Below are positions 1-64,000 of a stretch of 64,000 nt of DNA, one piece after another. Made by a program: the position numbers and the translations under genes. The notes beneath the pieces were generated by a model. The model saw only the letters and a list, made by a program, of their open reading frames with translations, made no database searches and was not told the origin of the DNA. This stretch comes from Podarcis erhardii (Eukaryota), in NCBI GenBank assembly GCA_964252035.1, contig OZ176201.1, one strand, 5' to 3'. Numbering within the stretch: the first letter of the stretch is position 1; each line of letters begins with the position of its first letter.

Positions 1-9
1 CTAAAAGTT

Positions 10-5398: not shown

Positions 5399-6014
5399 CC
5401 GTATTTTTCGCCCTATAGGACGCACGTTTTCCCCTCCAAAAATGAAGGGGAAATCTGTGCGTGTCCTATGGGGTGAATGCAGGCTTTCGCTGAAGCTTGG
5501 AGAGCGAGAGGGGTCGGTGCGCACTGACCCCTCTCGCTCTCCAGGCTTCAGGAAGCTATCAGCCTTCCCCAGACTGCGGATAGCAGCCTGCTGCCCGGTG
5601 CGCAGGGCACCCTGAAGCAGAGCGCCCGCGCACTGGGCAGACATCCACAGCCTGGGGAGCCCTGCGGGAGTTCCCGCAGGGCTCCCTAGGCTGTGGATAG
5701 CAGCCTGCTGCACGGAGCGCAGGACACCCTGAAGCAGCGCACCCTGCACTTCGGGCAGACATCGGCCAGCCCCACAAGCTCGGGGGACAGCGGGGAGGCG
5801 CAGCCATCCCGCTGTTCCTTGACCTGGTTTGGAGGCTGGCGCTGGGGAGAAGCCTCACAAACTCGGAGACAGCGGGGAGGCGGAGCGCCGCCATACTGCT
5901 CTTCCCCGACCTGGTTTTGGGGGGGAAATAAAGGGGATAAATTTCCTTTATTTCCCCCCAAAAAAACTAGGTGCGTCCTATGGGACAGAGCGTCCTATGG
6001 GACAAAAAATGCGG
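5399..6014. mobile_element. Non-autonomous Tc1/mariner-superfamily DNA transposon with internal duplications
   Basis: TA flanks at 5397-98 and 6015-16; TIRs ccgtatttttcgccctataggacgc / gcgtcctatgggacaaaaaatgcgg; two internal duplicated blocks (about 5579-5645 vs 5697-5763, and 5782-5829 vs 5864-5920). Confidence 0.88.
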
Positions 6015-7149
6015 TATTTCCTCATTTGACTGCTTGTGTAAACCAGCCTAACAAATGTGAAATTGAGTTGGGCAGGTTCAAAGTGCCCCTGGGAAGAGAT
6101 TTAGCCTCTAGGCACCCCATTCTCCCAAGGCCAGCACTAGCCATTGCATTGTGCTGATGCTAAGAAGCTAGGAAATGTCTTCAGGTGAATACTCAAGCAG
6201 CTTGTAAGGCCAAATGCTTCAGCCAAACTCTCTAAGGCAGGGAGAGGGAACTTGTGGACTTCAGATGTAGATGGACTATGGTTCCCATCATCCTTGACTC
6301 TTGACTAAGTTAGCTAGGGCTGATGGGATTTGGGGTCTATCCTTGGTCATGAGGGAAATAGAATTCTGTTCCCCATACATGTTGTTAGGGGAGGGTGGTT
6401 CAGTGCATGTGGCAGAGAATAAGCTCTCACACACCCCTCTGTGTGAAAGCATGGACATGGTGGCCAAAGATGAATGAGGTTCTGTGTCTTCATATAATGA
6501 AAAGAAGAATTAACAGACCGTGCACTGGACTGGGACTGCTTTATAATGCAGCCAACATTTCAGACACTCACCAAGCACTTTTGTGTCACATGGTGGCATA
6601 CACACACACCGTCATTTTAACTTCACAACAAGCCTGCAAGGTAGGTTAAGAGTTAGTGACACGCTTCGTGCTTAAGCAAGGATTTGAAGCTGGACTTTCC
6701 CAGTCCTAGTTTGACACTCTTAACCACCACCCTGACTTGGCCAAGTGCCACATGTATCTGTTTCACTTGAACCTGGAACTCATAAACGCAGCACTCCTGA
6801 TTTGTGCACATCACAAAACGAATGTGTGTGTGTGTGTGTGTGTGATTGTCATGTGACTGTTTCCACATGCATTCTGTTTTCCTGCGTGGAATTGCTTTCT
6901 GCGTAGGAAACGTGGAACATTTGCAAGCAACCCTGAGCTCCCACCCAGCACCCATTCACCCACCCTTGCACACTGGGGACAGGAAACAGCTGTGCAAGGA
7001 GGCCATCTCAATATGGGATAGATCCTGGGGGTGGGAGTGGGTCTGCCTGGCTCTTACCCATGGAACCCTGATCCTGTGTGTGTGTCCGTCTGCCTGCGGA
7101 AACAAAATGCAGCGGTGCTGAACCCCCGCAGCCTAAAGGCAGGAGTTCT

Positions 7150-48100: not shown

Positions 48101-51100
48101 ACAGGGTCCGATCTGCTTTGTTCTCTCCTTTCCAGGAACTGAAGCAGGAACTGGGGCACCGCTTGCAGCTCAATGACTTGCTCATCAAACCCGTACAGCG
48201 GATCATGAAATACCAGCTGCTGCTCAAGGTGCTAACGTGGGAGGTGGAGTGTTGCTTTCCAAATCTAAGGCAAATGTGTGTGTGTGTGTGTGTGTGTAGG
48301 GGGTGAGACCAACAAGTTCCTGACCTGTAGCTAAGGAGAGACAGCAGCCAATATGTCTTCTGCTGGGTATGATATCTATAGCAGTCTTTGGCAGTGTGGA
48401 CAAGTGCAGAACAGTGGTCTGTTTAATAATAATACCTTTATTGTCAATGTACAACCTGTGTACCATGAAATTAACCAAGCCTCCCTCCCCCCCCAAACAC
48501 TCAATCTCATGGCACTTTGTGTGCTTGTCGCACAGCACACCAACCCCGAAAGACAGTTGCACTATATTATTTTCTGTTTTAAGCGAGAGACCCTGTAGCC
48601 TCGTGTCACCTGCAGGACAGCAAACCATCCCAGTGTCACAAAAGGAGTCGCTGGGGTCTCTGTTGGCTGCCTAGCGCCACCTGATGGGTAATGGTTGTAT
48701 TTGCCTTCAGAGCTGGAACCAGGGTTAGGGCAGCTTCCAGTTTACATGGTAGCTGTCATATGGAGGCACTTGGTGGCTACAGTTCCTTGCAGAGTCCCAC
48801 TTGCTCCCCATTTCCCCAAGCAATGAAAGGTTTGAAAGATAGCACTGCCGGGTTTAGTTCCCTTTGGAAGAAGAGAGCTCTTGAGGCTTAAGGTTGTATC
48901 CAAAGTTGCCCACGCACAAGTGGAACAGACTCCTGCTTGCTTCACCTTCTGCTCCTTCCATGCGTCCCCCACACCCCCAAATATGTTCTGGAAGATTGGG
49001 GGACAGATTTAGGGGACATTGGGGGGCTGTAGTAGGGGGAGGAGGGTAAGGTGAAGTCCTGATGTGCAAGCAGAAGTCAGCTTATGCATAATAGCAGCTT
49101 TATTTACAAATATGCAAGGAGGGCATCAGTGAAGGCAGGTGTATTCCTATAAGCAGACAGCACAGTCTGAATCATTTGTTTCATAAGAACATAAAAGCCT
49201 GAAGCTGCTTCAAGCCAGTGGCCTATCTAGTCCAGCATCCTCTTCTCACAGTGGCCAACCAGAGGCCTGTGGGAAACCTGCAAGCAGGATCCAAGCACAA
49301 GAGCAAGACTCTCCCCTCCTGTGGTTTCCAGCAACTGGCAGTCAGAAGCATTGCTGTCTCCAACTGTAGGGACAAAGCAAAGCCATCATGGCTGATAGCC
49401 ATCTCAGTTGGGGACCAGCACTGCCTCGGGGGGGGGGGGGAGCAGGGGCCACTTGGAGTTGGTTGCATGGCTTGGCTCCGGTGAAATCCCACTCCTACCA
49501 CTAAAGAATGCACTGGTTCATTTCCTCTTTTCCCTCCCAGGATTTCCTGAAATACTATGGCAAAGCTGGCAAGGACACAGAACAGCTGGAGGTAGGACCC
49601 GGAGGCACTTGCAGCTGTTGCTCCCCAGTCCCACCCTTATGTGTGGACTGGATGTTATTACGCTGCTGCTTTCTTTCTTTCTTTTTCATATATTAATTTT
49701 TATTGAACTTTACAAGAAAAGAAAAGAAAACAAAAAACAATACATAACACTGTAAACACATTTATATACATGTTTTCCAAATTGCAAACTAAAAAAAAAA
49801 ACTTTTCATAGCCAATATTGCCAAATTCATGCTTCAAACATTACAATATATAAATCTTAGTTAAAATATTATAAAAGACTTCCACCACATTCACCGCAAG
49901 TCTCTTAGTTATCTTGCTCGCCTTTACATCTGTTCTTCAATCATTTCCCTTCCTTAGATTCTTTCATATTCAGTCAAATCTTTATGTTCTCTATATTCTT
50001 CACAAGGTTAGTCTGGGCACAACCAAACTTTCATATTTGAGCCCTGCTTGTATAAATAGTTGTTTAAGCATCCGCATTGTTTCTGAATTATAATTTTTGA
50101 TTTATGTCTTATTAAATCCATCAGTTTTGCTAATTCCAGGTACTCACATAGTTTACTTAACCATTCCCCTTTTGTTGGGATATAATTTCCTTTCCAGTGA
50201 CTGGCTGCCAACGTTCTCGCTGCTGTTCTTGCATACAGAAAGATGTTAATTTTGTCTTTGGGGATATCCTTACTCAAGATTCCTAATAAATATGCTTCTG
50301 CCTTTTTGATATATGATACTTTTATCAATTTTTTAATCTCTTCATGAATCATCTCCCAAATTTTTTTGATCTCTGGACATGTCCACCACATATGGTATAG
50401 AGTGCCTTTCATTCTATTACATCTCCAACATTTATTACTATTCGATCTATTTATTTTTGCTAGTCTGTCTGGTGCCATATACCATCTGTGGTGCATCTTC
50501 ATATAATTCTCTCTTAATGAACAGCAGGCTGTAAAATTTATATATTTTTTCCAAAACCTTTTCCAGTTTTCATAATCAATTGTATATCCTAAATCCCGTT
50601 CCCACTTTAGCATATTCTCTCCTTTGACTTTCAAATCAGGATCTGCAGAACTGTCCCACGAGGGTTACCACATGGTATGGGCATATTTTCATTCTGGATA
50701 TGCCTTGAGAGAGGGAGCGGAGGCTTCATTATGTTCCCGAGACTGCACTCATAGCTCACAGGGGTCTTGAATCCATATCTTATAATAGTGTCTGCATGGA
50801 ACTATGGCCCGTCAGTCTAAACGGGGCAGGTTGTCCAGTGTTGTTTCACATGTCCTGCATCTCCTGGGTTTAATGACACTGGCGCTGCTTGCCATGGGTG
50901 CACAGCCAGCCAGTCACCGGGCTATTCTGGTCCACCGCTTTCACCCGACTGCTTTCCTTTGCCTTTCAGAGAGCTGTGGAGGTGATGTGTTTTGTTCCTA
51001 AGCGCTGCAATGACATGATGAATGTGGGGCGTCTTCAGGGCTTTGAGGTAGGCCCTGGAAATCAATGGCTGGCTTGGAGATTCTACAGATCCTGGGGGAG

Positions 51101-51837
51101 CTAGGCTCTTAGCCCTGATTTTCCAATCAACTCTACTGCAGATGGCACCTTAATTTTTAGCAGTGGGGACTGTTCAAGGAAGAGAACCTTATAATTCCTC
51201 TTCAACCAGGCCTGGGGCTGATTCTATGGCCTTTTAAATGTGTCTGTGGGAGAGGGGGTTATTGATTTATTTTTGTTTTAACTACCGTATTTTTCGCCCT
51301 ATAGGACGCACCGTCCCATAAGGCGCACCTAGTTTTTGGGGGGGAAATAAGGGGGGGGAATTATTTCCCCCCCCAGGCACGGGGCTGGTGTGGGGGAAGC
51401 CCGAGCTTCCACCGACCCCAGCCCCCAAACAGGCAGCTCTCTGCAAGCCGTGGGAGCCCAGCGCCGGCTCCCGCTGCTTGCGGAGAGGTCCGCGAAGCCT
51501 GGATGCGCTGAGCTCAGTGCGCGCAGGCTTCAGCATGCAGGCAACTCTCCGCAAGCAGCGGGAGCCCAGAGGAGAGGTCCGCGAAGCCTGGAGAGCGAGA
51601 GGGGTCAGTGCGCTCCAACCCCTCTCGCTCTCCAAGTTTCAGCGAAAGCCTGCATTCGCCCCATAGGATGCACACACATTTCCCCTCCATTTTTGGAGGG
51701 GGAAAAGTGCGTCCTATAGGGTGAAAAATACGGTATTTATTTTGTGTTTCTATCCTGTATTTTAATCTTGTGAACTGCCCTGAGATCTTCAGATAAAAGG
51801 CAATATAATAATAGTAGTAGTAGTAGTAGTAGTAGTA

Positions 51838-51886
<49 letters not shown>

Positions 51887-54800
51887 GCATTTTAAAATGA
51901 GGGTCCTCCAACTCTGTGTACGTTGATCTGGAAATTGTGAGCTTAAAATATAGGAACAAGTGTGTAGAAAAGGGAGAGGTAATTGAAAGAATTAGGTCTC
52001 AGGGATTATCACACGTTGAATTTTTCAGCTTTCAGATTCCAAAAATGAGGGGTACTGAAAAGTTGGAAACATGACTTGGAAATTCAAAAGATATTTTGGT
52101 TAAATTAATATAGTTTTGTTTAGTAATGAAAATGTGTGTAAAATTGCATAGAAATTTTTAAAAACAATTGCCAAGTACTTGCATTTGTTTGTTTGTTTGT
52201 TTGTTTGTTATTAAGCATTACCTGAAATTTTCAGAAAGTAAAATTAAAAATTATTTGGCTTTCTGAAAACAGTGTATGTGCATCTTCATTAAGCGTAGAC
52301 GTTTCAAGCCAAATGTTGTCCAATCACAAAAATTATAGCAGATTTGTATTCCTCACACCCAGAAACATATTTTTAAGGCCCCTCACTGAAGCAATTTGCC
52401 CTAATCCACACCCCCTTGTCCCACTGCTTTGTCCTGTGGAAAACTGCTCTTTTGTTGTTGTTCTTTGGATTGCTGTTTGTCCTGATTTAACACTAAAGAG
52501 TGGCTTTCCCTGGGAAATGAGTGGGGCAAGGGGGAAACCACTTGGCCCCCTCCTTTCCAGGCACGGCAGAAGCAGAGGTGTGGACGAGCCCTCAGACATG
52601 TTGTGAAATATGTGGCACAGCCCTTGCTGGGAATACACTGCTTTAAATGTAAGTGAATATTTCGGTGCTGCCTCAGATCTAAAAGAACCCAAACCTCTCT
52701 GCATATAGAAAGTTGCTAAGTAAAGAAGAAGGGTTCTAGGCTTCTCCTTGACAGGTTAGTTTTCTCCAGGCAGGCAGTTTTTGAGTTGGGTCAGAATTCA
52801 AAGGCGCAGCCCGTCATCTGCAAGTGGTAATTCTGAGTCTTCTGCTCTAAGAACAGGGCAGTTTTGTGCCTTCTCCCCAGCTGAGTAACTAGGATCTGCC
52901 CTCTCTTCTCCAGGGGAAACTGACTGCGCAGGGGAAGCTGCTGCAGCAGAACACCTTCTGGGTGACGGAGCAGGCAGGCGGGATCCTGGCCCGGGGCCGT
53001 GAGCGGCGCATCTTTCTCTTTGAGCAGATTGTCATCCTGAGTGAGACCCTGGAGCGGCGGCGTGGTCCATATGCCGCTCCAACTTATGCCTTCAAGAGCA
53101 GCATCAAGGTATTACAGGGCTAACAGCAGAGAGCCTAGGCAAGCCTGTATTCCTGTACCTATCGCTGTTTACCCCCCGTTTCTGCGGTTGTACCATGTAT
53201 CTGCAGAATGTAATTGTAAGCACTGAATTTGGCATCCTGAGAGTCTATGCATGTGTATAAAATTTTATATGGCTAGAAATTGCGAGTGAAATTCAACTTG
53301 GTGTGCTGTTGCAAACGTTCTGTCTGTGTAAGCATTTCGGCTTGTGAGACAGAACAACCCCCTTTTCTCCCCCAGTGCACTGTTATGGGGGTTCTTCTGA
53401 CTCCCCTCCTCAGAGCCAATTTAGGGGTGCATGCAAGGGGAGGGAGAAGGCCCATTGCAAAAGCAAAAGCCCTTGCACAAGGGCTTCCACTGATGCGCTC
53501 ATTAGGTGAATCCTGCCTTTATATAAATGTATAGCCTTATGGCTGTGAAGATAGGATTGAAAGTGTGTGGGCATTGCTTGACGTAATCTCGGGAGCAGAG
53601 AACAGGGGTAGTGCAAAGCAAGGAAATATGGAAATTAACTGGCTTTGCATTCTTCGTTCAGGTTTCGGAATGCAGCTTTTCTTGGCACAAGAATATAGGC
53701 TGGCTTGGTGTGCAGAACGTCGATCTTTGTTTAAAGCACAGAGATTACACAGCCTTGGTTATATCCAGAGAACCACCCAACTTCTAGGACTTCATGAATG
53801 TGCAGATGTACCCAAATCTGTTTTCTAAATAAATAAATAAATAAACAAATACATTCCTTTTGCTTGACTGCCAGGCCCTCCCTGTTTGTCCATTTTATTG
53901 CTAATAACTTCTTCTTTTTCTTGCTTTTGAACGGTCATTACCTATCCACTATCCATCTCAATGCCAGGTCAGCTGTTTGGGCCTGGAGCCCTGTGTGGAT
54001 AATGATCCCTGCAAATTTGCACTGATCTCTCGTGGCGCAGAACGGGGCACCATCCGTTACGTACTGCAGGCAGCAACGTCAGAGATTGCCCAGGCCTGGG
54101 TGGCTGACATCAGCCTCATCTTGGAGACACAACGTGACTTCCTCAACGGTAGGGGGTTCAAAGAGATGTTCTGTTCCTAACTCTCTCAGGCACCCACTGC
54201 CCTTTAAACCACACCCAGCCTTCTTCAAGGAGTGATTCCTCAATATTTCTTCCTTCATTTTCCTCACTCCTGGTCTGGATGGAATATGAAAGCTAAGATG
54301 TTTCCACAATGCTTTGCAGAAGTATAGGAAACTTCAGCTGGCTTCTAGATGGTGGCGCGGGGGCAGGGAATAGACAATTTTCAAAGAGTAATTTGAATTA
54401 GAGTTTAAATAGTTTGGTTCTTTCTGAGTGAAAGAAATGACCTAGCAATAGGTTTGTTTAAGTTTGTTTTAAGTTATTTCTAATTCAACTTCTATCAGAA
54501 TTGATCCCAAGTACAAAAAAAGAATATTTAAAGTGATAAACACCCCAATTCCATGCCACCATATCATATCAGCAGGAATAAAACCATAATAAGGGCCCTG
54601 ATATTTATTGAGCATTCATCCTGATTTGCTTGCACAAAGCTTATGCGAAGGTTAGGTTACATTTAGCTTTTATTGAGTATTCATTCTGATTATTTGTGTG
54701 GGGGGGGTGTTAAATGTCAAGGACCCTTCATTTGCTACGGTATTGGAGCACTTTAATCCACTTTAAATGGTGCAAACCTACAGTTCTGGTATGCAATTGA

Positions 54801-57800
54801 ATCACTCCTGCAAAATCAATAGGAATGTTCATTAAAAAGGTCATCTGGAGGTACAATCCATTCTATCTCTGTCTGTCTCTTTCTATATACCAACCCCCGA
54901 ACCCCAGCTCTAATATTGCATTAGCATCTTCTCAGGTATGTGCAAGTCAGGCCTTAATTGTGCAATCAAGTGATGTACATGCATGTCTCAACTAGCCATA
55001 CATTTTTACTTCAAGCACAAGCTGGCCTTTGTGAATCAAGCCAACACACAACTTTGGAAGGGTGGAGTGAGTCCCAAAGTAGATGGCAGAGCGGAAGTGG
55101 ACTGCCAGTAAGCAGGAGGTCACATTTTTTAACACTTTCTCAAATAAAAAGCTGAGAGATTTGTATTCTAAATCTTTCTCTCTGATTTGCTGTGTTGAGA
55201 AAAGGTAGTGTCCCCCCCCCCACCCACACACATAGGGGAGCAATCAAAAATAGGATTCCCACCCTTCAGTTTGAAGTCAGACAGTAAAGATTTCTACCCT
55301 GCCATTTTGCATAATGTGTAGATCAGTTCTGAATGACTCTTAACTGCATGGACCATGTCTAGGAAACCTTTATTCCCCCAAGGGCCATGTTCCCCTAGGG
55401 GAAATCTGTTGGACACCACATGCCAGTGTGGGCAGGGGCAGAGCCTCCCCCCCTCTCTCTTAAGATATTCACTGCCCCATAATCTCTCAAAAGAGAGAAA
55501 TAAGTGTGTGGGGTAGTGATGATATTAAGAAATGGGGGTTGGGGGAGGGTGTTTGTTCATGGGATGGTGTTGATCTCAAGAGCTGCAATGCACCCTCGTG
55601 TGGCCTGTAGCCCCTCCTCTGCTTGCTGGGCTTCCTCCTGTCCCTGTCGTGCAGTTTCCAGGAGCTGCTGTCTTCTGGCACCTCAGGCACATTGAAGTGG
55701 TGGCTCCTGATGCAGCACCCCTCTCCTGCTTGATGAGGGTGCTTGAGACACCTTTGGACAGTGGCTTTTGAGAGAAGCATTTTAAGCTGCTTGAATCACA
55801 CCTGCGCTGGTGGGGCTGTGGGACTTCACCCAGTGGTTCCTGAATCACTCCCCTGAGGAGTCTTTTTTTTCTTTCTTTCAGAAGATTCTGTCTCACTAAT
55901 GGAATTCAGAGCGTTTTGTGTTTCCAGTGCGTGACCCTGCAGTTCATTGCCCCTTTCTGTTTCCTTGCCAGCACTGCAGTCGCCCATAGAGTACCAGCGC
56001 CGAGAGAGCAAAACCCATAGCCTAGGACGCATTGGAGTCCCGCATCACTCACTGCCTGGTGGACCCAGCCGGCCCTGCTCCTCCGTCTCCATGGACCAGA
56101 GCAAGGGATCCAGCCTCCAGCCCCACAACGCCTCTCTCCCCTCCCTCTACCTTCCGGGCCCAGGCCAGCCTGAGCAACAGGCCTATGTTGAGGTAAGGTA
56201 AAGGTAAAGGGACCCCGACCATTAGGTCCAGTCGTGACCAACTCTGGGGTTGCGGCGCTCATCTCGCTTTACTGGCCGAGGGAGCCAGCGTACAGCTTCC
56301 GGATCATGTGGCCAGAAGGACTAAGCCGCTTCTGGCGACCCAGAGCAGCACACAGAAACGCCGTTTACCTTCCCGTCGGAGCGGTACCTATTTATCTACT
56401 TGCACTTTGATGTGCTTTCGAATTGCTAGGTTGGCAGGAGCAGGGACTGAGCAACGGGAGCTCACCCCATCGCAGGGATTCGAACCGCTGACCTTCTAAT
56501 CGGCAAGTCCTAGGCTCTGTGGTTTAAACCACAGTGCCACCCGCGTCCCGTAAGGTAGGAAGGTCTTAAACGGAAGATCCCTGTTGAATTAACAGCTTTG
56601 TGAGGTTGGGCTGGCACAGGTGAAGTTCCTGTTCTAGCTTTGGAATGAAAGGGGCTAGTAATTGGCAACAGGAATTTGAAATTCAGTTCAGTGCTTACAT
56701 TTGTTAAACCTCATTAACACATGTATAGTTTGCAAGAGCTACGTGAAGCAGAAAATGAAAACAATCATTTGTCATTAAAACAATCCACCGTGTGTGCTGG
56801 CTTGAGATTGCATTGTACACATGCTGTCACAGAGACAAAGGAAAGTTATCTTTCCCACACAATTCATATCACTATTGTCCAACAAAATTTCATTTAAAAA
56901 AATGCCCCAGGGGAGATGTTCCAAAAATGTAGGCATTTAACCTCATCAGAACACAATAAGGGCCTGCAGGATCAGGCCAGTAGCCCACCTAGACCAGCAT
57001 CCTATTTTCACAAGGGCCAGTCAGAGGGGTGTGGGAAGCCTACAGGCAGAACTTGAGCACACCAACCACTCCTCCCTTCTTGCCGTTTCCACCAACTAGT
57101 ATTCAAAAGCATTACTGCATCTGAGAACCTCCTTGTTAACAGCTGCTCAACAAAAAATGAGAAATTGGAGCTCAATGCTCAGTTAGTATTTTAGTCTCAT
57201 TTGTAAGCCGTCCCGCAAATATTTATATCAAGGGGCACTGTAGATAGCTTTAAGAATAAGAAGTAAAGAAGTAAATAAATGCGACATGTTTTCCTGTTTG
57301 GGACAAAATCTTGGGGTCTATTAAACTAGAGGATGTTGACCTCATCCCATGCAGATGGATTTTCTCCTTGTACCCTTTCATTGATTAATCCAGAGTGGTA
57401 ACAGCTAATGGATTGGAATCATCCGCTTGCTGCAGAAGCATGTGTTGAGCAACTCCAACTGTAAGTGTTAAGTTGGGGCGAACATATCAGACGACACAGT
57501 GATTCTTCCAAAGCAGCTCTTTATTTGCAAGCTGGAACAGAACAGAACTGAACTGAGGAGCTCAGTCAGCCTGCTCCAGAACAATTGTAACTGTTGCAAC
57601 TTTCTAAAACTATCCAATCACTGAACGTCACTTTTGATCCTTCATTTGCATACAAACTATCCAATCACTGAACGTCACTTTCGATCCTTCATTTGCATAA
57701 CTATCTACAGTACCCCCCTGCTGGCCCAGGGTGAGAACTTCAGTAAAAGACACCGTGGTTGATATCACCAATTGAGGTGTTGACAACAAAAAAAGTAAAC

Positions 57801-60800
57801 ATGGAAGGGGAAAGAGTAACATATGAGGATATTACTAGGAAAACAGAACAAGGGATAAAGCTCAAACTATATGACCAAATTGAAAAGATGTTAACAGGGT
57901 GGCTGCAATACCACCAGATCAGTGACTTATTAAAGGAAGATAAAAAGAGAAATGGGTTCGAAGATAAAAAATCAAAATTCCAAATCGAGTTAATAGACTG
58001 TAAAGATAAAGTTTTATCAAGAATGTATAGTTTATTGCTAGAATGGTATATAAAAGACGAAGAAGTAAAGGAATCAATGATAAAATGGGCAATTGATATC
58101 GGGCATAACATTGAATTGGATACGTGGAAAAGATTATGGAAGGAGGATTTGAGATTTACAGGATGCATGGCTTTAAAGGAAAACTTGCTAAAAATGATGT
58201 ATAGATGGCATTTGATGCCAGTAAAATTAGCTAAAATGTATAGGAAAAAAGAAAGAAAATGTTGGAAATGTAAAAAGGCAGATGGGGACTATTTCCATAT
58301 GTGGTGGACCTGCGATAAGGTAAAAAAATTTGGGGAATCAATTTATAATGAACTCAAAAAAATATTTAGATATACTGTATTTTTTGCTCCATAGGACGCA
58401 CCGCCCTATAGGATGCACCTAGTTTTTTTGGGGGGGGGGGGAATAAAGAAAAAAAATTATTTCCCCCCCAGGCACGGGGCTGGCACGGGAGAAGCCCGAG
58501 CTTCCCCCAACCCCAGCCCCCAGAAGAGCCTGCTATCCACAAGCCTAGGGAGCCGCACCGGTCTCCCCAGGCTTGCGGACAGCTATGCAAAGCCCGGGCA
58601 TGCTGAGGCTTCCTAATGCAGGCAGCTCTGCGCAACCCTCCAGAGCCCGGCACAGCTTGGCACCAGGCTCCGGAGGGATGCGCAGAGCTTCCTGAAGCCT
58701 GGAGAGCGAGAGCCTCTCACTCTCCAGGCTTCAGCGAAAGCCTGTATTCGTCCCATAGGACGCACCCACATTTCCCCTTCATTTTTGGAGGGGGGAAAAG
58801 TGCGTCCTATAGGGCGAAAAATACGGTACTTTCCCCAAAAGACCGGAAGCGTGTCTATTAGGCTTAATAGGAACAGAAATTAAAATAGAAGATCAAAATT
58901 TGTTCATGTATGCTACAGCTGCCGCGAGGACCCTTCTGGCCCAAAGATGGAAAGTACAAGATATACCAACTATTCAGGAGTGGCAGGCGAAGTTGACAGA
59001 ATATGCAGAACTTGCCAAACTGTCAGGGAGGATCTGGGACCAGGGAGATCAAAGATACCAAAATAACTGGAGTAAATTTATTGAATATTTAAAGAAGAAT
59101 TGTAAAGTGGTCAAGACACTAGCAGGATTGACATAATACCTCCAATGTATAATAGTACTAATATGAGAATGATGTGCGTGATGGAAAAAGGATAACTATA
59201 CCAGTTGTGGGGAGGGAGGGGGGTCGCGACTCGGCAGAGTCAAAGGGAATGTATGGTGCTATTACAATTTGTTGGAAAAAAATATGTAAAGAAAACAATA
59301 AAAATTCACTTGGGGGGAAAAAGAGAGAACTTCAGTACATAACAGTAAGAATATAACTGTGAGTGTGCTTAAGGGATGTTAGGGAGTGTGTGGTCTCTGT
59401 TCAGTGAGCTTATGCAACACAGTGTGTCACAGTTCCCCAAAGTGGAGACCAGGCTAGTGGCCCTTCCGCTGCCACCAGGCAGAAGTCTTTATTTTTCTGG
59501 TTGCCTCCACCAAACAATCTAAGCTCACCTGGGTTTCAAAAAGAACACACTTAGGTAGTGTGTGGCTTGGCTTTTAAGCATAGGGTGGGCAAGAGACCAC
59601 AAGGCTTTGTGAAAGAGGTTTAAATGTTCACTAAAAAAGAAGGTTTTAACATCTGAATGGTTATGTACATACAAAACAATCACCAAAGCAACCTGAGTCT
59701 GGACATCATCTGTTTCCAACAGTAATGGGGTGGGAGGGAATTGGGTCTAGGGCCTCTGTTCTGAAACTTCAAACTGGGCAGCAGGTATTCAGGAAAAGAG
59801 GGACAGAGGAGGGGACCGTTGAGTTCCCCTTGGGTGACTAACTGGAGAGCAGCTAGGGAGACTGCTAACTCTTTCCCAGACTGCCTGGGTGAGATGACGT
59901 CTTCATCATCTCACCTGCCAGACCCTCCAGATGGACAGGTGTGCTGCTAACCATTCCTCGCAGCATCATGGTCTCAGCCAGGCTGGTTCTGTGGCTTGCT
60001 CTGCTGCCAAGGTGATGGGTGAGAGAGGTAGAACTGGAGCCAGGCAAGAGAGAAGACAAGTAGACGTGTCTGCTGCTGATAAACTAAGCCTTTAATATTC
60101 AGTCCATAGATACTTGCATGCATGCATGTGAGGATATTCACACACTCCTCCAAACATGTTGCAGGGAAGGGGAGGGTAGAGGAAATTCAGAGTAGGTTTG
60201 TTACTCATAGGCATAAGCAAGCTTCCCCCATTCTGAAACCATCCAAATATTGTTTGTGTTCATTAACCACTGCCAATATCATAATCATTTTTCTTCTTGT
60301 TACATTGACTGCCTCTCCTTCAATTTCCCTCTGTTTTAATTTTTCATTATTACTGTTGGAGTCATCTATCTGCTAAATAACCGTTCAGTAGTTATTGTTT
60401 TTTTCCTTGGTTATATTGTATTATTTCTGATGAGGATTATCTGTTGTTGTGATTTTTAAAAATGTTAATCACTAAAACCTATAGCAAGTGGGGAGGAAAG
60501 ACGAGGAGCCCAAAGTAGTGAGCACTGTTCTGCGAAGACAGTGGTGAAGACAAGAGTGCTGATTTCTGTTCTCAGATATGAGTTGGAGGAGGAGGAGGGT
60601 AGGAAAGAGTGCTATGCTGTCTTAGGAGGCTTCAGGACTCTACAGGTTTCTGATTCCAGATTATAGAATAGAATCATAGAATCCTAGAGTTGGAAGAGAC
60701 CACAAGGGCCATCGAGTGCAACCCCCTGCCAAGCAGGAAACACCATCAGAGCACTCCTGACATATGGTTGTCAAGCCTCTGCTTAAAGACCTCCAAAGAA

Positions 60801-61439
60801 GGAGACTCCACCACGCTCCTTGGCAACAAATTCCACTTAGATGAAAAGGAGATCAGACTGATCTCTAATAGAGGCAGAGAGAGACACACACAAGAGATTT
60901 GCAAGAGGATGCCTATCTGTTTTCTTTTTTGGGAAATTAGATGACTTCATTTGATGAATTGGATTGCCAGAATCCCTTCCAGGTCAGGGGTCTTGTGAAA
61001 CTTTGACGTTTGCATGGCGTGCTTTCAATGTGAGATGTTGTTTGACTTCAGCTATGCACAAGTTGACAGTTGACAAGCTATGCACACTTTCTCACATAAT
61101 AGGACACCAAATTGAGAGCACCCATCTGTGCTGGAATGTTGTCTACTCCCTACCCAGATTAAACCCGGTTTGCTTTCTGCCCCCAGCCATCTCGCAGCCA
61201 AAGCTCTCCAGGGCCTGGACCAGTTCACCTACCTTCCGATGGCTCCGAGGTGCATCTCTCCAATTCCTCCCAGCAGGAGTCCCTGCACACAGTGAGTTTT
61301 GGTAGGGCAGAGGAAGTGTTCCTTTTAATCTGAGTAAGGATTCAACATTCACAGTTGACATAACGATAATGATTCAGGTTCTGTTGCCCGTGGCCTTACT
61401 CATTCTTTCCATCAGGATTTAACTTTCATTGGGACTGAC

Positions 61440-61488
<49 letters not shown>

Positions 61489-63911
61489 CCCCACCACCTG
61501 ACCACATGTTGCCACCGTGCCACAGAAGCCTAGGAAAAAATGCAGAATCTGGCACAGGTTGCAGGATTCAAAGCTTCTGCCTATAGTGGCCTTCCCAGTG
61601 AGAAACCACTGACATTCTTCCAAAAGAATCCCAGGGTTCCCCAAAACACAGTCTGAAATTCATTGCTGTGTTAGTAGAGTATGTCCCCATCTCTTGCGTT
61701 GTTTACCATTGCTGATGCATTCATATGCCAGTAATTTTATTTCTGGAAAGCTTTTTGATGCTGTGCTTTCCTTCCCACAAGAGATTTTGAAAGCATGCCA
61801 TATACACTTTTCTTCCTTCCATTTACCTGCAATCTGCTCCACTCTCAGGCTGAGAACATGGGCAGACATTGCCTAATGAGCTGTCTTATGCTCTTATCTT
61901 TGGTTTTGCTTTAGAGCAGAAATGAAGAAACTGTGGCTCTCGAGAAGCTGTTGGACTGCAACTCCCACCGTCTCTGATCATTGGCTTTGCTGGCTGGGGC
62001 TGATTGGAATGTAAGAGCATAAGACAGGCATAGGCACACTCGGCCCTCCAGATATTTGAGGCTACAATTCCCATCATCCCTGACCACTGGTCCTGTTAGT
62101 GAGGGATGATGGGAGTTGTAGTCCCAAAACATCTGGAGGGCAGAGTTTGCCTATGCCTGCCATAAGATGAGCCCCCAAGGGCCCTTCTAGCCCAGCATCC
62201 TGTACTCACAGCCAATCAGGAACCTATGGGAAATGCATAAGCTGATCCTTTAAGCGCAACAGCACATTCTTCCCACTTGTGCTTCCGAGATACCAGGTAC
62301 TGGTATTCTGAGGTGTACAATCTTCGATACTGAAGCTGCCGTGACTAGTAGCCATTAAGGCCCTTATTGCCCATGATGGAGGTGGAGTCCAACACATCTG
62401 AAGGCCCACAGGTTCCTCATCCCTGATTGAGAGTAAGCCTGAGTAAGTATATATGGGCAAATTTGTTATACGCAACTGATAGTTGTTAGTTAAAAGGAAC
62501 CTCTGTGTATGTAGGACATTGCTTCTCAAAGGCTGTGGCACAAGGAGAGGATGGCAAACATGACAGGAAGATTCAAGGAGAACAAAAGAAACATTTCATT
62601 ATAGAATTGTATCAAAAAAATTTTTTTTGCAATATGTGGATAGATATATTTCCAAAATGAGAGCAAGAGCATAAAGTGATACTGAGAACAATCATAGTTG
62701 TGATCTAGAATCGCTGTCCCAATGTATTTCTTATCAATAAAAAAAATGGTGTGGTGCAAGAAAATTTCTATTCTGAAAGTGTGATCCAAAGAAACAAGGT
62801 TGAAAATCACTGATGTAGGAGACGAATTGAGAATTAAATCTGTAGATTAAAAGTTAAACTTTGTATCCCACATATGTGGGAGACATAGAAAAAGTGGGCT
62901 GTCAATCCATTTAACAAAGTAAAACACGTATTGTATACATTTTTGCAGCTTACTAAAATTTAGGAATTGGGCAATTACAGCTTTTTGTCCCTTTTATTTG
63001 AGGTTTGCTGACCTCCCCCTCTTCAGCCCTGCTGCAGAGAATGAACCACATGTTTTAGTAAGATAAACAATTACATTTCAATGCAGGCAGCAGATACAAT
63101 ACAGGTAATAAAACTTATCAGGTACAAAATACAAAAGTTGGCTTCTATAGGCTGTATCTGTCTGGACCTCCCAGATACACATTTGATCAGTTTGGAAACA
63201 TGGTAGAAAGAGTCTCTTCTCAGAGACAGGATGAAATATAAAAGATTATCTCCATGGTTACAGAATTCCAGCCAGCGGAGGCAAGGGAAGTAAGCACACA
63301 GAGGGTCCTCTCTAGGAAATTTAAGTGCACTCTTTGTGTACTAGCCCTGTCTTGTCTAGCAAAACATACATTTGGCTGCAAACCCCACACTGTGGACAGA
63401 GGCAGAATACCAGAATATCTCTGAACACTAGATCTAAGTGTTGGCAACAACAGGAAAAGTCATCACCTTCATTCCCTGCCTTGCGTGTTTCAAAGAGGCA
63501 TCATGTTGGCGGCTGCTGAGACACAAAATGTTGGATTTGATGCACCTTGGCCTGATCCAGCAAGGCAGTACTTAAGATGATTAATCTGCATAATTTATAC
63601 AGAATGCAGAATGCAGCTTTTCGCAGCACAGAATTGGATTACCCCGTAAGAGATATATTGAACCAAAGTATTACACTGTCTTACCTGTTGATAAGATAAA
63701 GCCAATGGATGTGCCGTGGCAGGAGCTCTGCGGTGGGAGTCTTGCAAAATACATCTCAGGAACCTTTCCAGAGTTTTCATTTTTCCTCTGTCCCTGACAG
63801 GCCCCAACTGATGACGACGCTAGGCCGCTGCTCCCTGATCCTGAAGTCCCGGAAATCAGTTTCCCTCAAGGCTGTGCTCAACTTGCCCAACTTGATGAGG
63901 ATGAGCTGTGA
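7787..63911 (+). CDS. ARHGEF25: Rho guanine nucleotide exchange factor 25 (p63RhoGEF/GEFT); join(7787..7877,33360..33664,37799..37876,39242..39369,39891..39957,44994..45097,45388..45457,47082..47171,48136..48228,49541..49591,50970..51047,52914..53108,53968..54148,55972..56192,61187..61291,63801..63911), 1968 nt, about 655 aa
   Basis: All introns are GT-AG with matching phases and the join is open. N-terminus [27 protein letters not shown] domain ([20 protein letters not shown]...[18 protein letters not shown]), PH domain, [16 protein letters not shown] extension and C-terminus LDEDEL match recalled human ARHGEF25 rather than TRIO or KALRN. Confidence 0.95.
8907..8946. repeat. (GT)20 microsatellite; others at 6824-6844, 48276-48298 and (AC)20 at 61445-61484
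   Basis: Read directly from the sequence. Confidence 0.97.
10300..10478 (+). mobile_element. tRNA-derived squamate SINE (Squam3-like); other copies at about 1883-2031 (-), 14885-15025 (-) and 21463-21616 (-)
   Basis: Shared tctgctttgcatgcagaag...cctggagagcc...gagctagatggaccaatggtctgac pattern; family name from memory. Confidence 0.7.
11103..11459 (-). mobile_element. Full-length Sauria SINE
   Basis: Reverse complement of the 10..366 element; 10-bp TSD atatatgctg at 11093-11102 and 11460-11469. Confidence 0.93.
14514..14642. mobile_element. Palindromic hAT MITE
   Basis: 34-bp perfect TIR caggcttcctcaacctcggccctccagatgtttt; perfect 8-bp TSD gtataaag at 14506-13 and 14643-50. Confidence 0.92.
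16815..16975 (+). mobile_element. MIR/CORE-type SINE; other copies at about 6600-6735 (-), 10690-10850 (-), 19130-19300 (-), 30680-30815 (+) and 46900-47020 (-)
   Basis: CORE-like gggtgaccttgggccagtc...tctctcagcctaacctac...gggttgttgtgagg. Confidence 0.7.
20860..21337. mobile_element. Non-autonomous hAT element with a CpG-rich core
   Basis: TIRs cataggcgccgact / agtcggcgcccctg; perfect 8-bp TSD acaactaa at 20852-59 and 21338-45. Confidence 0.9.
21885..22255 (-). mobile_element. Full-length Sauria SINE
   Basis: Same family; TSD ttcagcgtta at 21875-21884 and 22258-22267. Confidence 0.92.
23731..23925 (-). mobile_element. CR1 3' end (catagaatcatag type); related copies at 60662-60838 (-), 15045-15165 (+) and 34010-34090 (+)
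   Basis: catagaatcatag...gttggaagggatcttgagggtcatctagtccaacccc is the reverse complement of the CR1 terminal repeat. Confidence 0.8.
24190..24560 (+). repeat. Old interspersed repeat, probably a DNA transposon relic; second copy at about 37990-38445
   Basis: Shared blocks atgtgtcctacttta...agtcctctattttgaag, gaagttgcccatcaa, atggtgagatg and tgaygcaaatcattt. Confidence 0.6.
25674..25924. mobile_element. Tc1/mariner (Tigger/pogo-like) MITE
   Basis: TA flanks; TIR cagtggtacct / aggtaccactg; CpG-rich interior. Confidence 0.88.
26470..26617 (-). mobile_element. tRNA-Lys(CTT)-derived SINE with a CR1-type tail; a related copy lies at about 9533-9650
   Basis: Minus strand reads gctcagttggtacagcacgagactcttaatctcagggttgtgggt...gttgggc, followed by a CR1 3' end. 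Confidence 0.75.
28497..28648. mobile_element. Internally deleted Penelope-like terminus
   Basis: Same family as 45896; one arm followed directly by the distal end of the opposite arm. Confidence 0.8.
29265..29390 (-). mobile_element. BovB (RTE) LINE 3' end
   Basis: [25 protein letters not shown] on the - strand with a (CAA)n-type tail; a second fragment lies at about 26122-26186. Confidence 0.85.
30911..30934. repeat. (GT)7(GC)5 alternating purine-pyrimidine tract
   Basis: Read directly from the sequence. Confidence 0.95.
33360..33664 (+). CDS. ARHGEF25: Exon 2: [22 protein letters not shown]...[15 protein letters not shown]...RKSIDLG...PQES
   Basis: Acceptor ctctccctgcag at 33359; phase 1 joins exon 1 (G+AT = Asp); [13 protein letters not shown] matches human YSIAGSEGSISAS; donor gtaggc at 33665 (alternative gtgaga at 33674, same phase). 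Confidence 0.88.
36149..36826 (-). mobile_element. L2 LINE 3' portion with (AAT)n tail
   Basis: Typical lizard L2 RT C-terminal sequence and 3'UTR (ccccgcctatctggctggg...); (AAT)16 at 36101-36148. Confidence 0.82.
37799..37876 (+). CDS. ARHGEF25: Exon 3: [26 protein letters not shown]
   Basis: Acceptor ttcccttgcattacag, donor CAG|gtgagc, phase 0-0; resembles human ELPELTLLTTLLEGPGDKTQ. Confidence 0.8.
39242..39369 (+). CDS. ARHGEF25: Exon 4: [16 protein letters not shown]...[15 protein letters not shown](M)
   Basis: Long pyrimidine tract then atggcag; donor AT|gtaagt, phase 0-2; matches human EEEQKKKALERSM. Confidence 0.9.
39891..39957 (+). CDS. ARHGEF25: Exon 5: (M)[22 protein letters not shown], start of the DH domain
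   Basis: Acceptor tcccctgcag; donor GAG|gtgcca (weak); phase 2-0. Confidence 0.95.
40755..41232 (-). mobile_element. Penelope-like element with a degenerate GIY-YIG C-terminus
   Basis: Minus-strand translation [35 protein letters not shown]...[15 protein letters not shown]; same pLTR motif at 40755-40830. Confidence 0.85.
41870..42140 (-). mobile_element. Degenerate CR1 reverse-transcriptase fragment
   Basis: [18 protein letters not shown] corresponds to the CR1 RT motif QHGFxKGKSCLTNLxxFY. Confidence 0.8.
42636..42914 (+). mobile_element. 5'-truncated Sauria SINE starting in the B box
   Basis: Same family; TSD tagcctta at 42628-42635 and 42915-42922. Confidence 0.9.
43090..43720 (-). mobile_element. 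Degenerate CR1 ORF2 fragment
   Basis: [18 protein letters not shown] resembles the CR1 motif FFKYIRSKxxxRExVGPL; boundaries approximate. Confidence 0.6.
44513..44811. mobile_element. Old hAT-like MITE
   Basis: TIRs cagtggtttttcaa / ttggaaagccattg; no clean TSD. Confidence 0.5.
44994..45097 (+). CDS. ARHGEF25: Exon 6: [34 protein letters not shown]
   Basis: Acceptor cttctgcag; donor GA|gtaagt; conserved Dbl IFGNIxQIYxWH motif. Confidence 0.95.
45388..45457 (+). CDS. ARHGEF25: Exon 7: (D)[23 protein letters not shown]
   Basis: Acceptor atcccag; donor CAC|gtgagt; phase 2-0. Confidence 0.95.
45896..46119. mobile_element. Penelope-like element terminus forming a perfect inverted repeat
   Basis: Penelope pLTR-type motif gtagcaccttaaagaccaac...gagctttcgtgtgcatgcacacttcttcag; arms 45931-46022 and 46028-46119. 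Confidence 0.85.
47082..47171 (+). CDS. ARHGEF25: Exon 8: [30 protein letters not shown]
   Basis: Acceptor ttgtttttcag; donor GAG|gtaagg. Confidence 0.96.
48136..48228 (+). CDS. ARHGEF25: Exon 9: [31 protein letters not shown]
   Basis: Acceptor ctcctttccag; donor AAG|gtgcta; DH CR3 motif. Confidence 0.96.
49541..49591 (+). CDS. ARHGEF25: Exon 10: [17 protein letters not shown]
   Basis: Acceptor tccctcccag; donor GAG|gtagga. Confidence 0.95.
49675..50635 (-). mobile_element. 5'-truncated L1-clade LINE (ORF2 C-terminus and AT-rich 3'UTR)
   Basis: ORF 50008..50634(-) contains [18 protein letters not shown] and is homologous to the 57746 element. No clear TSD, so boundaries are approximate. 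Confidence 0.88.
50970..51047 (+). CDS. ARHGEF25: Exon 11: [26 protein letters not shown]
   Basis: Acceptor gcctttcag; donor GAG|gtaggc. Confidence 0.96.
51285..51733. mobile_element. Tc1/mariner MITE of the same family, inserted in an L2 3' tail
   Basis: TA TSD; TIR ccgtatttttcgccctataggacgcac; flanks read as an L2 3' end running into (TAG)n(AAT)n. Confidence 0.9.
51806..51886. repeat. Compound (TAG)n(TAA)n microsatellite forming an L2 tail
   Basis: Read directly from the sequence. Confidence 0.95.
52914..53108 (+). CDS. ARHGEF25: Exon 12: [19 protein letters not shown]...[16 protein letters not shown]...FKSSIK, PH domain
   Basis: Acceptor ctcttctccag; donor AAG|gtatta; 195 nt, phase 0-0. 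Confidence 0.96.
53968..54148 (+). CDS. ARHGEF25: Exon 13: [23 protein letters not shown]...[21 protein letters not shown]-terminus
   Basis: Acceptor atgccag; donor G|gtaggg; phase 0-1. Confidence 0.96.
55972..56192 (+). CDS. ARHGEF25: Exon 14: [20 protein letters not shown]...QAYVE, containing the Galpha-q-binding extension
   Basis: Acceptor ttccttgccag; [13 protein letters not shown] matches human; donor GAG|gtaagg at 56193; phase 1-0. Confidence 0.93.
56201..56549 (-). mobile_element. Full-length Sauria SINE at the exon-14 donor
   Basis: Same family; TSD gtaaggta at 56193-56200 and 56550-56557. Confidence 0.93.
57436..57460 (+). CDS. ARHGEF25: Candidate 25-nt exon (KHVLSNSN + T), phase 0-1
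   Basis: tgctgcag acceptor with a weak tract and a strong ACT|gtaagt donor; it supplies the phase needed to use 59880..59938. No homology support. Confidence 0.3.
57746..59324 (+). mobile_element. 5'-truncated L1-clade LINE (ORF2 C-terminus with CCHC knuckle, 3'UTR)
   Basis: [18 protein letters not shown] motif; aataaa near 59297; 13-bp TSD gagaacttcagta at 57733-57745 and 59325-59337. Confidence 0.92.
58375..58826. mobile_element. Tc1/mariner MITE of the same family, nested in L1 ORF2
   Basis: TA at 58373-74 and 58827-28; same TIRs and same orientation as the 51285 copy. Confidence 0.92.
59880..59938 (+). CDS. ARHGEF25: Candidate exon (x)[19 protein letters not shown], phase 1-0
   Basis: ctaac branch-like motif plus ctttcccag acceptor; CAG|gtgtgc donor; only the phase-1 frame is open; Ser/Pro-rich like the flanking exons. 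Confidence 0.45.
61187..61291 (+). CDS. ARHGEF25: Exon 15: [35 protein letters not shown]
   Basis: Acceptor ctttctgcccccag; donor ACA|gtgagt; 105 nt, phase 0-0, open. No recalled human counterpart. Confidence 0.7.
62025..62159. mobile_element. hAT MITE of the same superfamily, abutting an older degenerate copy; further decayed copies at about 2240-2305, 4025-4130, 18490-18560 and 34634-34715
   Basis: TIR caggcataggc...gcctatgcctg; TSD gcataaga/ccataaga (7/8). Confidence 0.85.
62517..62812. mobile_element. Non-autonomous hAT (Charlie-like) element
   Basis: TIRs cattgcttctcaa / ttgaaaatcactg; perfect 8-bp TSD atgtagga at 62509-16 and 62813-20. Confidence 0.85.
63801..63911 (+). CDS. ARHGEF25: Last coding exon: [36 protein letters not shown]
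   Basis: Acceptor tccctgacag; 36 aa ending LAQLDEDEL, matching the recalled human C-terminus LAKLDEDEL. Confidence 0.93.
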   Translation, partial: APTDDDARPLLPDPEVPEISFPQGCAQLAQLDEDEL

Positions 63912-64000
63912 CTCTTGGACTGTGGGAAAGCCCCTGTCAGACCAGTGGGGTGGGGGCTTTGACTGATCTAACTAGCTCTTCCCTCTCCTTCTCCCACCCT

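What the first reader, a model, noticed from the sequence alone, without database searches (positions are those of the whole stretch)
56190..56557. Sauria SINE inserted exactly on the exon-14 splice donor, duplicating it
Seen: exon 14 ends GAG|gtaaggta and the antisense SINE starts immediately after. The same 8-mer gtaaggta recurs at 56550-56557, so the TSD is the 5' splice site itself. The SINE's reversed tail (aaaggt)n adds further GT motifs. The upstream TSD copy keeps the donor intact. Use of the downstream copy (ccc|gtaagg) or intron retention would read VEVR-stop (TAA at 56199-56201), truncating the protein just after the Galpha-q-binding extension. Inference: a splice-neutral insertion that may create a new truncated or NMD isoform.
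Basis: partly seen in the sequence, partly recalled or inferred. Interest (0 to 1): 0.7.

Follow-up and report, generated by a model that had tools for sequence, protein, structure and literature searches.

The report
Young SINE duplicates a splice donor
A recently inserted lizard SINE sits eight bases into an intron of the ARHGEF25 (p63RhoGEF) gene and duplicated the intronic half of the splice donor, leaving the working donor intact; this is a clean but ordinary case of a tolerated transposon insertion, and any effect on splicing is untested.

Summary
A 349-nt antisense Sauria-type SINE (56201-56549) follows the donor of exon 55971-56192. GTAAGGTA flanks it on both sides and occurs nowhere else in the window.

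The orthologous ARHGEF25 loci of Podarcis muralis and P. raffonei read GAG|GTAAGGTAGGAAGG, with one GTAAGGTA and no SINE. So the 8-mer is a true target-site duplication made of intron positions +1 to +8. The insertion arose in the window's own lineage, which is about 3.3-3.7% diverged from both species.

The site fits the published Bov-B/Sauria signature: TTT, 10 nt, then a duplication starting TA after an (ACCTTT)n tail.

Annotated lacertid proteins splice ...AYVE|PSRSQ..., so the GAG| donor is the real one. Downstream exons lie at 61187-61291 and 63801-63911.

The upstream donor remains the strongest by U1 pairing. The SINE tail adds two weaker GT sites, at +5 and +11. The old intron start, now 357 nt downstream, keeps two more.

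The VEVR-stop reading is correct. On intron retention, however, a stop at that codon already existed before the insertion (TAG).

This is a textbook-quality but ordinary tolerated insertion. The scan holds no other report of it on other DNA.

The parts
55971..56192 (+). ARHGEF25 coding exon ([12 protein letters not shown]...QQAYVE), phase 0 at both ends. It is exon 14 of a transcript starting at the MRGG exon near 7.8 kb, and coding exon 15 of 17 in the 713-aa isoform.
   Evidence: Translation. Local tblastn shows 98.7% identity to residues 567-642 of P. muralis and P. raffonei ARHGEF25.
56193..56200 (+). Upstream copy of the target-site duplication, GTAAGGTA. It forms intron positions +1 to +8 of the authentic 5' splice site GAG|GTAAGG.
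   Evidence: It has the best U1 pairing in the region, -10.1 kcal/mol. Annotated lacertid proteins splice after ...AYVE.
56199..56201 (+). In-frame TAA, read if the exon runs on past the donor (VEVR*). Its last base is the first base of the SINE tail. The empty allele has TAG at the same codon.
56201..56549 (-). Full-length 349-nt Sauria-type SINE, antisense to the gene. The head GGGACGCGGGTGG... lies at the 56549 end and the tail ...CCCTTTACCTT at the 56201 end.
   Evidence: Alignment with 4 window copies and with 18 further BLAST matches in L001/L002. It is absent from the orthologous site in P. muralis and P. raffonei.
56201..56211 (-). The SINE's microsatellite-like tail (sense CCCTTTACCTT). 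On the gene strand it reads AAGGTAAAGGG. Together with the duplication it makes two extra GT sites, at 56198 and 56204 (AAG|GTAAAG).
   Evidence: Tail (ACCTTT)1-2 reported for Podarcis in PMC13295347.
56472..56486 (-). Pol III B-box-like motif GGTTCGAATCCCTGC in the tRNA-derived head.
   Evidence: exact match; 8 matches in the window against 1.35 expected.
56550..56557 (+). Downstream copy of the duplication, GTAAGGTA, which is the start of the original intron. Candidate decoy donors lie at 56550 (CCC|GTAAGG, weak) and 56555 (AAG|GTAGGA, strong).
56568..56570 (-). TTT on the SINE-sense strand, 10 nt upstream of the first base (T) of the duplication. This is the Tn part of the Tn-TA insertion signature.
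   Evidence: Signature described in PMC13295347.
61187..61291 (+). Next coding exon ([35 protein letters not shown]), 105 nt, phase 0/0. It is a cassette exon, skipped in one Zootoca isoform. The SINE-bearing intron therefore spans 56193-61186.
63801..63911 (+). Last coding exon ([11 protein letters not shown]...LAQLDEDEL, stop TGA at 63909-63911), with a phase-0 acceptor.

Best explanation
A Sauria-type SINE was retrotransposed into ARHGEF25 in the window's own lineage, after its split from Podarcis raffonei. Such SINEs are tRNA-derived and are presumed to be mobilised by the Bov-B LINE machinery. The first-strand nick fell on the gene strand right after GTAAGGTA^GG, that is after intron position +8. 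This is a TA site with TTT one helical turn away on the SINE-sense strand. The staggered second nick fell at the exon/intron border. The repaired insertion is therefore flanked by an 8-bp duplication that is the intronic half of the 5' splice site. All consensus positions of the donor (-3 to +8) are rebuilt next to the exon, so the authentic donor GAG|GTAAGG is unchanged and most likely still dominates. The insertion is then essentially neutral for the main mRNA. Side products are possible but unproven. They could use the tail-made GT sites at +5 and +11, or the displaced old intron start 357-362 nt downstream. Shown here: the insertion, its duplication, its polarity and the position of the real donor. 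Inferred: the nicking steps and the splicing neutrality.
For: The empty site with a single GTAAGGTA is found in P. muralis (L001, exon end 66286) and P. raffonei (L002, exon end 65901). Megablast alignments break at window 56200/56550 and overlap by exactly 8 nt in both loci. SINE copy A is shared by the window and P. raffonei but absent from P. muralis. That makes P. muralis the outgroup, so absence of the focal SINE from both means gain in the window lineage. In the SINE-sense strand the site reads TTT-N10-TACCTTAC after a CCCTTTACCTT tail. This matches the published Tn-TA signature and the (ACCTTT)1-2 tail of Podarcis Sauria SINEs (PMC13295347). Most of the duplications I could delimit among 13 other full-length matches (window, L001, L002) also start TA and are 8-15 nt long. 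The two copies of the duplication are identical, and the SINE keeps 23 CpGs, the most among the window copies. Four annotated lacertid species splice ...QQAYVE|PSRSQ..., and the window has the matching phase-0 exons. U1 duplex energies are -10.1 for the authentic donor, -6.8 for the two tail sites, -5.1 at 56550 and -9.2 at 56555. The predicted unpaired probability of the donor is not lower with the SINE (0.34-0.35 against 0.10-0.25).
Against: Donor use is therefore inferred from orthologues that lack the SINE. Up to 7 of the 8 duplicated bases (TACCTTA) also match the SINE's own tail repeat. Part of the upstream copy could have been templated from the SINE RNA rather than from the target, and the sequence cannot distinguish the two. 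In mammals, SINEs within 100 bp of exons are depleted and more often appear in chimeric transcripts (PMC3088655), so some splicing effect is not unlikely. Whether the insertion is fixed, polymorphic or heterozygous in the species is unknown. Only two relatives were examined.
Confidence: 0.8

Rival explanations
1. The insertion is not neutral. The array of competing donors it creates diverts a real share of ARHGEF25 transcripts. The sites are 56193, the tail-made sites at 56198 and 56204, and the displaced sites at 56550 and 56555. Use of 56204, 56550 or 56555 includes the TAA at 56199-56201 with at least one spliced junction more than 50 nt downstream, which predicts NMD. Use of 56198 adds 5 nt. 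That opens a shifted frame which stays open through exons 15 and 16, giving an altered C-terminus.
For: The tail-made sites are AAG|GTAAAG (U1 duplex -6.8) and 56555 is AAG|GTAGGA (-9.2). The +2 frame is open across 61187-61291 and across 63802-63963 (ORF list; read by frame only, exons not joined). In mammals 11.7% of SINEs within 100 bp of exons appear in chimeric ESTs, against 1.6% elsewhere (PMC3088655). At the acceptor side, the canine Merle SINE shows that a boundary insertion with a duplicated splice site can redirect splicing (PMC7349775).
Against: The authentic donor pairs best with U1 and is unchanged from -3 to +8. Using 56550 or 56555 would make a 579-584-nt exon. A tandem donor 5 nt downstream (GTAAG|GTAGGA) already existed before the insertion, yet annotation in four species uses GAG|. 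No transcript data were available.
Confidence: 0.15
2. The exon is the terminal coding exon, the protein ends ...AYVEVR*, and GTAAGG is not a used donor. The SINE would then sit in a 3' UTR.
For: A stop follows two codons after GAG both with the SINE (TAA) and without it (TAG).
Against: Turtle, fish and lizard ARHGEF25 proteins continue for 60-90 residues to ...LDEDEL. The window holds both downstream exons with matching phase and good splice sites, at 94-97% identity to Podarcis proteins.
Confidence: 0.03
3. The two GTAAGGTA copies are not a duplication. They are chance, a piece of SINE tail, or an assembly artefact.
For: By count alone, 22 of 100 shuffles give two or more GTAAGGTA in the window. 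TACCTTA resembles the tail unit ACCTTT, and copy A has a tail that runs CCCTTTACCTTTACCT.
Against: Two related species have exactly one copy at the orthologous place and no SINE, with an 8-nt alignment overlap. The boundaries coincide with the SINE head and tail as defined by other copies. An assembly artefact would not produce a clean duplication with the family's known nick signature.
Confidence: 0.02

Closest known systems
Sauria SINE insertions mobilised by Bov-B LINE (Tn-TA insertion signature; Nakatsuka and Ohshima 2026, PMC13295347)
   Same: It has a tRNA-like head and an (ACCTTT)n tail. The target-site duplication begins with T then A, and TTT lies about 10 nt upstream. Copies in the same gene show lineage-specific presence or absence among Podarcis species.
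   Different: The duplication here is only 8 bp, whereas that study scanned for 10 bp or more. The target itself resembles the tail (TACCTT), which the authors say is rare for Bov-B. The nick also fell inside a 5' splice-site motif.
Canine Merle: antisense SINE at the PMEL intron 10/exon 11 boundary (PMC7349775)
   Same: An antisense SINE was inserted exactly at an exon/intron border. Its target-site duplication (15 bp) contains the original splice site. The SINE tail supplies new splicing signals next to it.
   Different: Merle is at the acceptor, where the poly(T) tail lengthens the distance from branch point to acceptor and activates a cryptic acceptor, giving a phenotype. Here the border is a donor, the authentic site stays adjacent to the exon, and no effect has been shown.
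Tolerated TEs in the hazardous zone of introns (Zhang, Romanish and Mager 2011, PMC3088655)
   Same: Fixed TEs within 20 bp of exons are rare and lie mostly on the donor side. A full-length SINE can be tolerated very close to a donor.
   Different: Those data are mammalian Alu/B1 elements with L1-type duplications. This is a squamate RTE-dependent SINE, only 8 nt from the exon.
Alu-type exonisation and alternative 5' splice sites from antisense SINEs
   Same: An antisense SINE brings GT motifs and could extend an exon into the element, with a premature stop and NMD.
   Different: No exonised transcript has been shown here. The GT motifs come from the hexamer tail rather than from the SINE body.

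Membership tests
Sauria SINE (Bov-B-dependent, tRNA-derived squamate SINE) | tRNA-related 5' head with pol III box B | tested here: met
   GGTTCGAATCCCTGC is matched exactly at 56472-56486 on the minus strand, and the head aligns with the other copies. ARAGORN calls no tRNA in the window, as expected for a degenerate tRNA-like head.
Sauria SINE (Bov-B-dependent, tRNA-derived squamate SINE) | 3' microsatellite-like tail (ACCTTT)n | tested here: met
   The tail is CCCTTTACCTT(T). The literature gives (ACCTTT)1-2 for Podarcis muralis (PMC13295347).
Sauria SINE (Bov-B-dependent, tRNA-derived squamate SINE) | Target-site duplication starting with T (then A), with TTT about 10 nt upstream (Tn-TA) | tested here: met
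   The SINE-sense strand reads CCG TTT AAGACCTTCC | TACCTTAC | GGGACG. Most duplications delimited in the other copies of the window, L001 and L002 start with TA.
Sauria SINE (Bov-B-dependent, tRNA-derived squamate SINE) | 3' region shared with the Bov-B LINE 3' end | not tested
The assignment rests on head, tail, insertion signature and copy family.
Target-primed retrotransposition insertion with a true target-site duplication | Orthologous empty site with one copy of the duplicated sequence | tested here: met
   P. muralis (L001 66287-66294) and P. raffonei (L002 65902-65909) each carry a single GTAAGGTA directly followed by GGAAGGTCTT....
ARHGEF25 / p63RhoGEF | DH (RhoGEF) domain followed by a PH domain | tested here: met
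   Pfam RhoGEF PF00621 (E 1.3e-9) on 48085-48303, and SOS1/NGEF-like PH PF22697 (E 1.8e-13) on 52893-53120.
ARHGEF25 / p63RhoGEF | Orthology to annotated ARHGEF25 | tested here: met
   Window exons are 89-100% identical to P. muralis and P. raffonei ARHGEF25. The loci are colinear at 96-97% base identity, i.e. 3.3-3.7% mismatches. Turtle, snake and fish ARHGEF25 are the top hits of a relative.
ARHGEF25 / p63RhoGEF | Galpha-q binding through the C-terminal PH extension helix | not testable with these tools
   The segment ...[18 protein letters not shown] is conserved. Binding itself is known only from the mammalian protein (general knowledge).
Exonised SINE / SINE-derived alternative 5' splice site | Transcripts that use a SINE-borne or displaced donor | not testable with these tools
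Only U1-pairing energies are available.

The most novel reading that the evidence does not exclude
The antisense Sauria tail (AAAGGT)n mimics a 5' splice site, and donor-like sequences (TACCTTAC on the opposite strand) pair with the SINE RNA tail. Splice donors would then be recurrent, microhomology-favoured targets of this SINE. Each such hit would leave a tandem array of competing donors. Here that array would give the window's lineage its own ARHGEF25 C-terminal isoforms: a +5 frameshifted tail, or NMD-regulated forms.
Probability: 0.08. Interest if true: 0.55.

Novelty: new member of a known kind. Interest (0 to 1): 0.3.

Why it matters
It is a clean natural example of how a target-site duplication can rescue a splice site that a retrotransposon hits directly. 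The 8 duplicated bases are exactly the intronic part of the donor, so the gene keeps a complete site.

It gives a dated presence/absence marker for Podarcis phylogeny. It shows that Sauria SINEs were active after the split from P. raffonei.

It also offers a ready-made natural minigene for studying donor competition, with one strong, two tail-made and two displaced donors. The host gene has a well-understood function as a Galpha-q effector RhoGEF.

It does not reveal a new mechanism. TEs very near donors are known to be tolerated, and a rough estimate predicts tens of such hits per genome. The assumptions are 1-5 lineage-specific SINE insertions per 70 kb here, a genome of about 1.5 Gb and about 2x10^5 introns. 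This estimate is my inference.

Tried and rejected
That stretch was handled only with local reading, alignment and scripts.

(2) A survey of many lacertids through short contigs, using the exon-14 peptide as a query, was considered and left out for the same reason.

(3) Joined (spliced) protein models were not built or searched. Exons were searched one by one by reference, and frames of alternative junctions were read from the per-frame ORF list only.

(4) Lacerta agilis and Zootoca vivipara loci could not be fetched. Isoforms P0276 and P0278 are not the longest products on record.

(5) ARAGORN finds no tRNA in the SINE heads.

(6) The count of GTAAGGTA alone is not significant, so I rejected it as evidence.

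(7) The terminal-exon reading (protein ending VEVR*) was rejected after the two downstream exons were found.

(8) Copy A's tail first suggested that ACCTTA could be tail rather than duplication. The P. raffonei and P. muralis sites showed that copy A's duplication is TAACCTAAAAGTT and its tail ends ...ACCT. The worry therefore shrinks to an undecidable microhomology.

(9) Earlier scan notes held nothing more on this place.

(10) Pfam on the ORFs of the neighbouring 1.9-kb insertion gave nothing usable.

Full report
**What is in the sequence**

The + strand reads ...CCTATGTTGAG|GTAAGGTA|AAGGTAAAGGGACCCC...(SINE)...CGCGTCCC|GTAAGGTA|GGAAGGTCTTAAACGG. The exon frame gives ...QQAYVE, then VR and TAA at 56199-56201. 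GTAAGGTA occurs only at 56193-56200 and 56550-56557. The count itself is not significant, since 22 of 100 shuffles reach two.

The 349 nt between the copies (56201-56549) are a minus-strand element. Its head is GGGACGCGGGTGGCACTGTGG, it carries a B box GGTTCGAATCCCTGC, and its tail is CCCTTTACCTT. Four more copies lie in the window: about 9-365 (+), 11106-11459 (-), 21883-22256 (-), and 42637-42922 (+, truncated at the 5' end). They are 78-92% identical to the focal copy. ARAGORN calls none of the heads a tRNA.

**The gene**

Pfam finds a RhoGEF domain and a SOS1/NGEF-like PH domain in exon-sized ORFs outside the focal stretch. A search of protein representatives with the PH exon gave full-length relatives (P0005, P0021). 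A word search with P0005 then returned annotated ARHGEF25 from turtles, snakes, lizards and fish.

The 90% identity cluster of the Podarcis muralis protein also holds P. raffonei, Lacerta agilis and Zootoca vivipara isoforms. All of them read ...[10 protein letters not shown]|[12 protein letters not shown]...QQAYVE|[14 protein letters not shown]...SLHT|AP(S)DDDARPLL...LDEDEL.

Local tblastn places these pieces in the window at 55971-56192, 61187-61291 and 63801-63908, at 94-99% identity. The splice sites and phases fit. So the focal exon is internal and the donor after GAG is the annotated one. The SINE-bearing intron is 56193-61186.

The label "exon 14" fits a transcript that starts at the MRGG exon near 7.8 kb. 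On the 713-aa isoform it is coding exon 15 of 17.

**The decisive test: the empty site**

Through the longest annotated isoforms I fetched the whole ARHGEF25 loci of P. muralis (L001) and P. raffonei (L002).

- Both read ...CCTATGTTGAG|GTAAGGTAGGAAGGTCTT(C/A)AACGGAAG..., with one GTAAGGTA and no SINE.
- Megablast alignments of the window break at 56200 and 56550 and overlap by 8 nt in each locus.
- The window differs from both species by 3.3-3.7% mismatches over about 59 kb. It therefore comes from another, closely related lacertid, most likely another Podarcis.
- SINE copy A is present in the window and in P. raffonei. P. muralis has the empty site there, with a single TAACCTAAAAGTT.
- That places P. 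muralis outside the pair. The focal SINE, absent from both, was therefore gained in the window's lineage.

The identical duplication copies and the 23 retained CpGs agree with a young age.

**Mechanism**

Nakatsuka and Ohshima (PMC13295347) report three features of Sauria SINEs. They end in (ACCTTT)n, with 1-2 units in P. muralis. Their duplications start with T followed by A. TTT lies about ten nucleotides upstream.

In SINE sense the focal site is CCG-TTT-AAGACCTTCC-|TACCTTAC|-GGGACG, an exact fit. Most of the duplications I could delimit among 13 other full-length matches (window, L001, L002) also start TA and are 8-15 nt long.

I infer the following steps. The first nick fell on the gene strand after GTAAGGTA. 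Reverse transcription was primed on the U-rich tail. The second nick fell at the exon/intron border.

Seven of the eight duplicated bases (TACCTTA) also match the tail repeat. A contribution of tail-templated bases, or of tail-target pairing, cannot be excluded and cannot be resolved from the sequence.

**Consequences for splicing (inferred, not shown)**

Positions -3 to +8 of the donor are unchanged. U1 pairing energies were computed with the U1 5' end typed from general knowledge:

| Site | Context | U1 duplex energy (kcal/mol) |
|---|---|---|
| 56193 | GAG\|GTAAGG | -10.1 |
| 56198 and 56204 | AAG\|GTAAAG (tail-made) | -6.8 |
| 56550 | CCC\|GTAAGG | -5.1 |
| 56555 | AAG\|GTAGGA | -9.2 |

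The 56555 site was already a tandem donor, 5 nt after the authentic one, in the empty allele. The predicted accessibility of the donor is not reduced by the SINE.

Use of 56204, 56550 or 56555 would include the in-frame TAA with spliced junctions far downstream, which predicts NMD by the standard 50-55-nt rule. Use of 56198 would shift the frame into an ORF that stays open through both downstream exons (frames).

Intron retention gives VEVR-stop, but it does so in the empty allele too (TAG). A truncated protein would lack the last 71 residues. It would keep the DH-PH unit, the Galpha-q-binding helix and the 74 residues of exon 14.

**What could not be done**

Afterwards I kept the letters of 53800-57600 out of all collection and family searches and worked beside them or locally. 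Fixation in the species, and any isoform, therefore remain untested. Lacerta and Zootoca loci could not be fetched.

**Comparison with what is known, and verdict**

The closest analogue is the canine Merle SINE at the PMEL acceptor, whose 15-bp duplication holds the original splice site (PMC7349775).

In mammals the few TEs within 20 bp of exons lie mostly at donors. SINEs within 100 bp of exons are depleted and are more often chimeric in ESTs (PMC3088655).

This gene alone shows one to five lineage-specific SINE insertions per species. Hits within a few bases of a donor should therefore occur tens of times per genome before selection (my rough estimate).

The finding is real, the structural interpretation is right, and the case is neat. 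It is a new member of a known kind rather than a new phenomenon.

Noticed in passing
window 57466-59340: A second lineage-specific insertion of about 1.9 kb lies in the same intron. It is absent from P. muralis (9-nt alignment overlap, like a target-site duplication) and from P. raffonei. It carries ORFs of 215 and 107 aa with no Pfam match, and part of it (58373-58831) resembles repeats at 51283-51738 and 5397-6020.
   Followed up: partly
window 9-365; L002 9109-9451; L001 about 9264-9276: SINE copy A is present in the window and in P. raffonei but absent from P. muralis, which has the empty site with one TAACCTAAAAGTT. This is a presence/absence marker that groups the window's species with P. 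raffonei.
   Followed up: yes
L001 64260-64621; L002 29237-29593, 45736-46093, 60385-60739, 69552-69908: P. muralis and P. raffonei each carry their own SINE insertions in this gene. They belong to a second subfamily with 3' end ...GGGCAGGGGTACCTTTACCTTTACCTT. One sits in P. muralis intron 13, about 1.7 kb upstream of the focal exon's donor. Sauria SINEs were clearly active after these species split.
   Followed up: partly
window 61187-61291: This 105-nt, phase 0/0 exon is skipped in Zootoca vivipara isoform X4 (P0211 reads ...AYVE|APSDDD...). It is therefore a cassette exon, and the focal donor has two alternative acceptors (61187 and 63801).
   Followed up: partly
window 56193-56203 and the empty sites in L001/L002: The ancestral intron start already held two overlapping donor-like sites 5 nt apart (GAG|GTAAG|GTAGGA). 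The insertion replaced the second by AAG|GTAAAG and moved the original 357 nt downstream.
   Followed up: partly
window 42637-42922 (+) and 56201-56549 (-): These SINE copies are in opposite orientation, 88% identical over 285 nt, within one pre-mRNA. They bracket the exons from 44985 to 56192. Such pairs can form double-stranded RNA and favour back-splicing.
   Followed up: no
window 20860-21337, 45897-46116, 51293-51730: Three further stretches are present in the window but absent from P. raffonei, each with an 8-12-nt alignment overlap in L002, as for target-site duplications. They are probably other young insertions.
   Followed up: no
window 21850-22290 (minus strand): SINE copy D is preceded by a short partial duplicate of the flank plus the SINE head (GCTGAACCGGGATGCGGGT, then AACGCTGAACCGGGACGTGGGT). 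The origin is unclear.
   Followed up: no
protein cluster of P0211: The 90% cluster of Zootoca ARHGEF25 isoform X4 lists a 51-aa metagenomic protein named as a MazE-type antitoxin as a member. This looks like a clustering oddity of the database, not biology.
   Followed up: no
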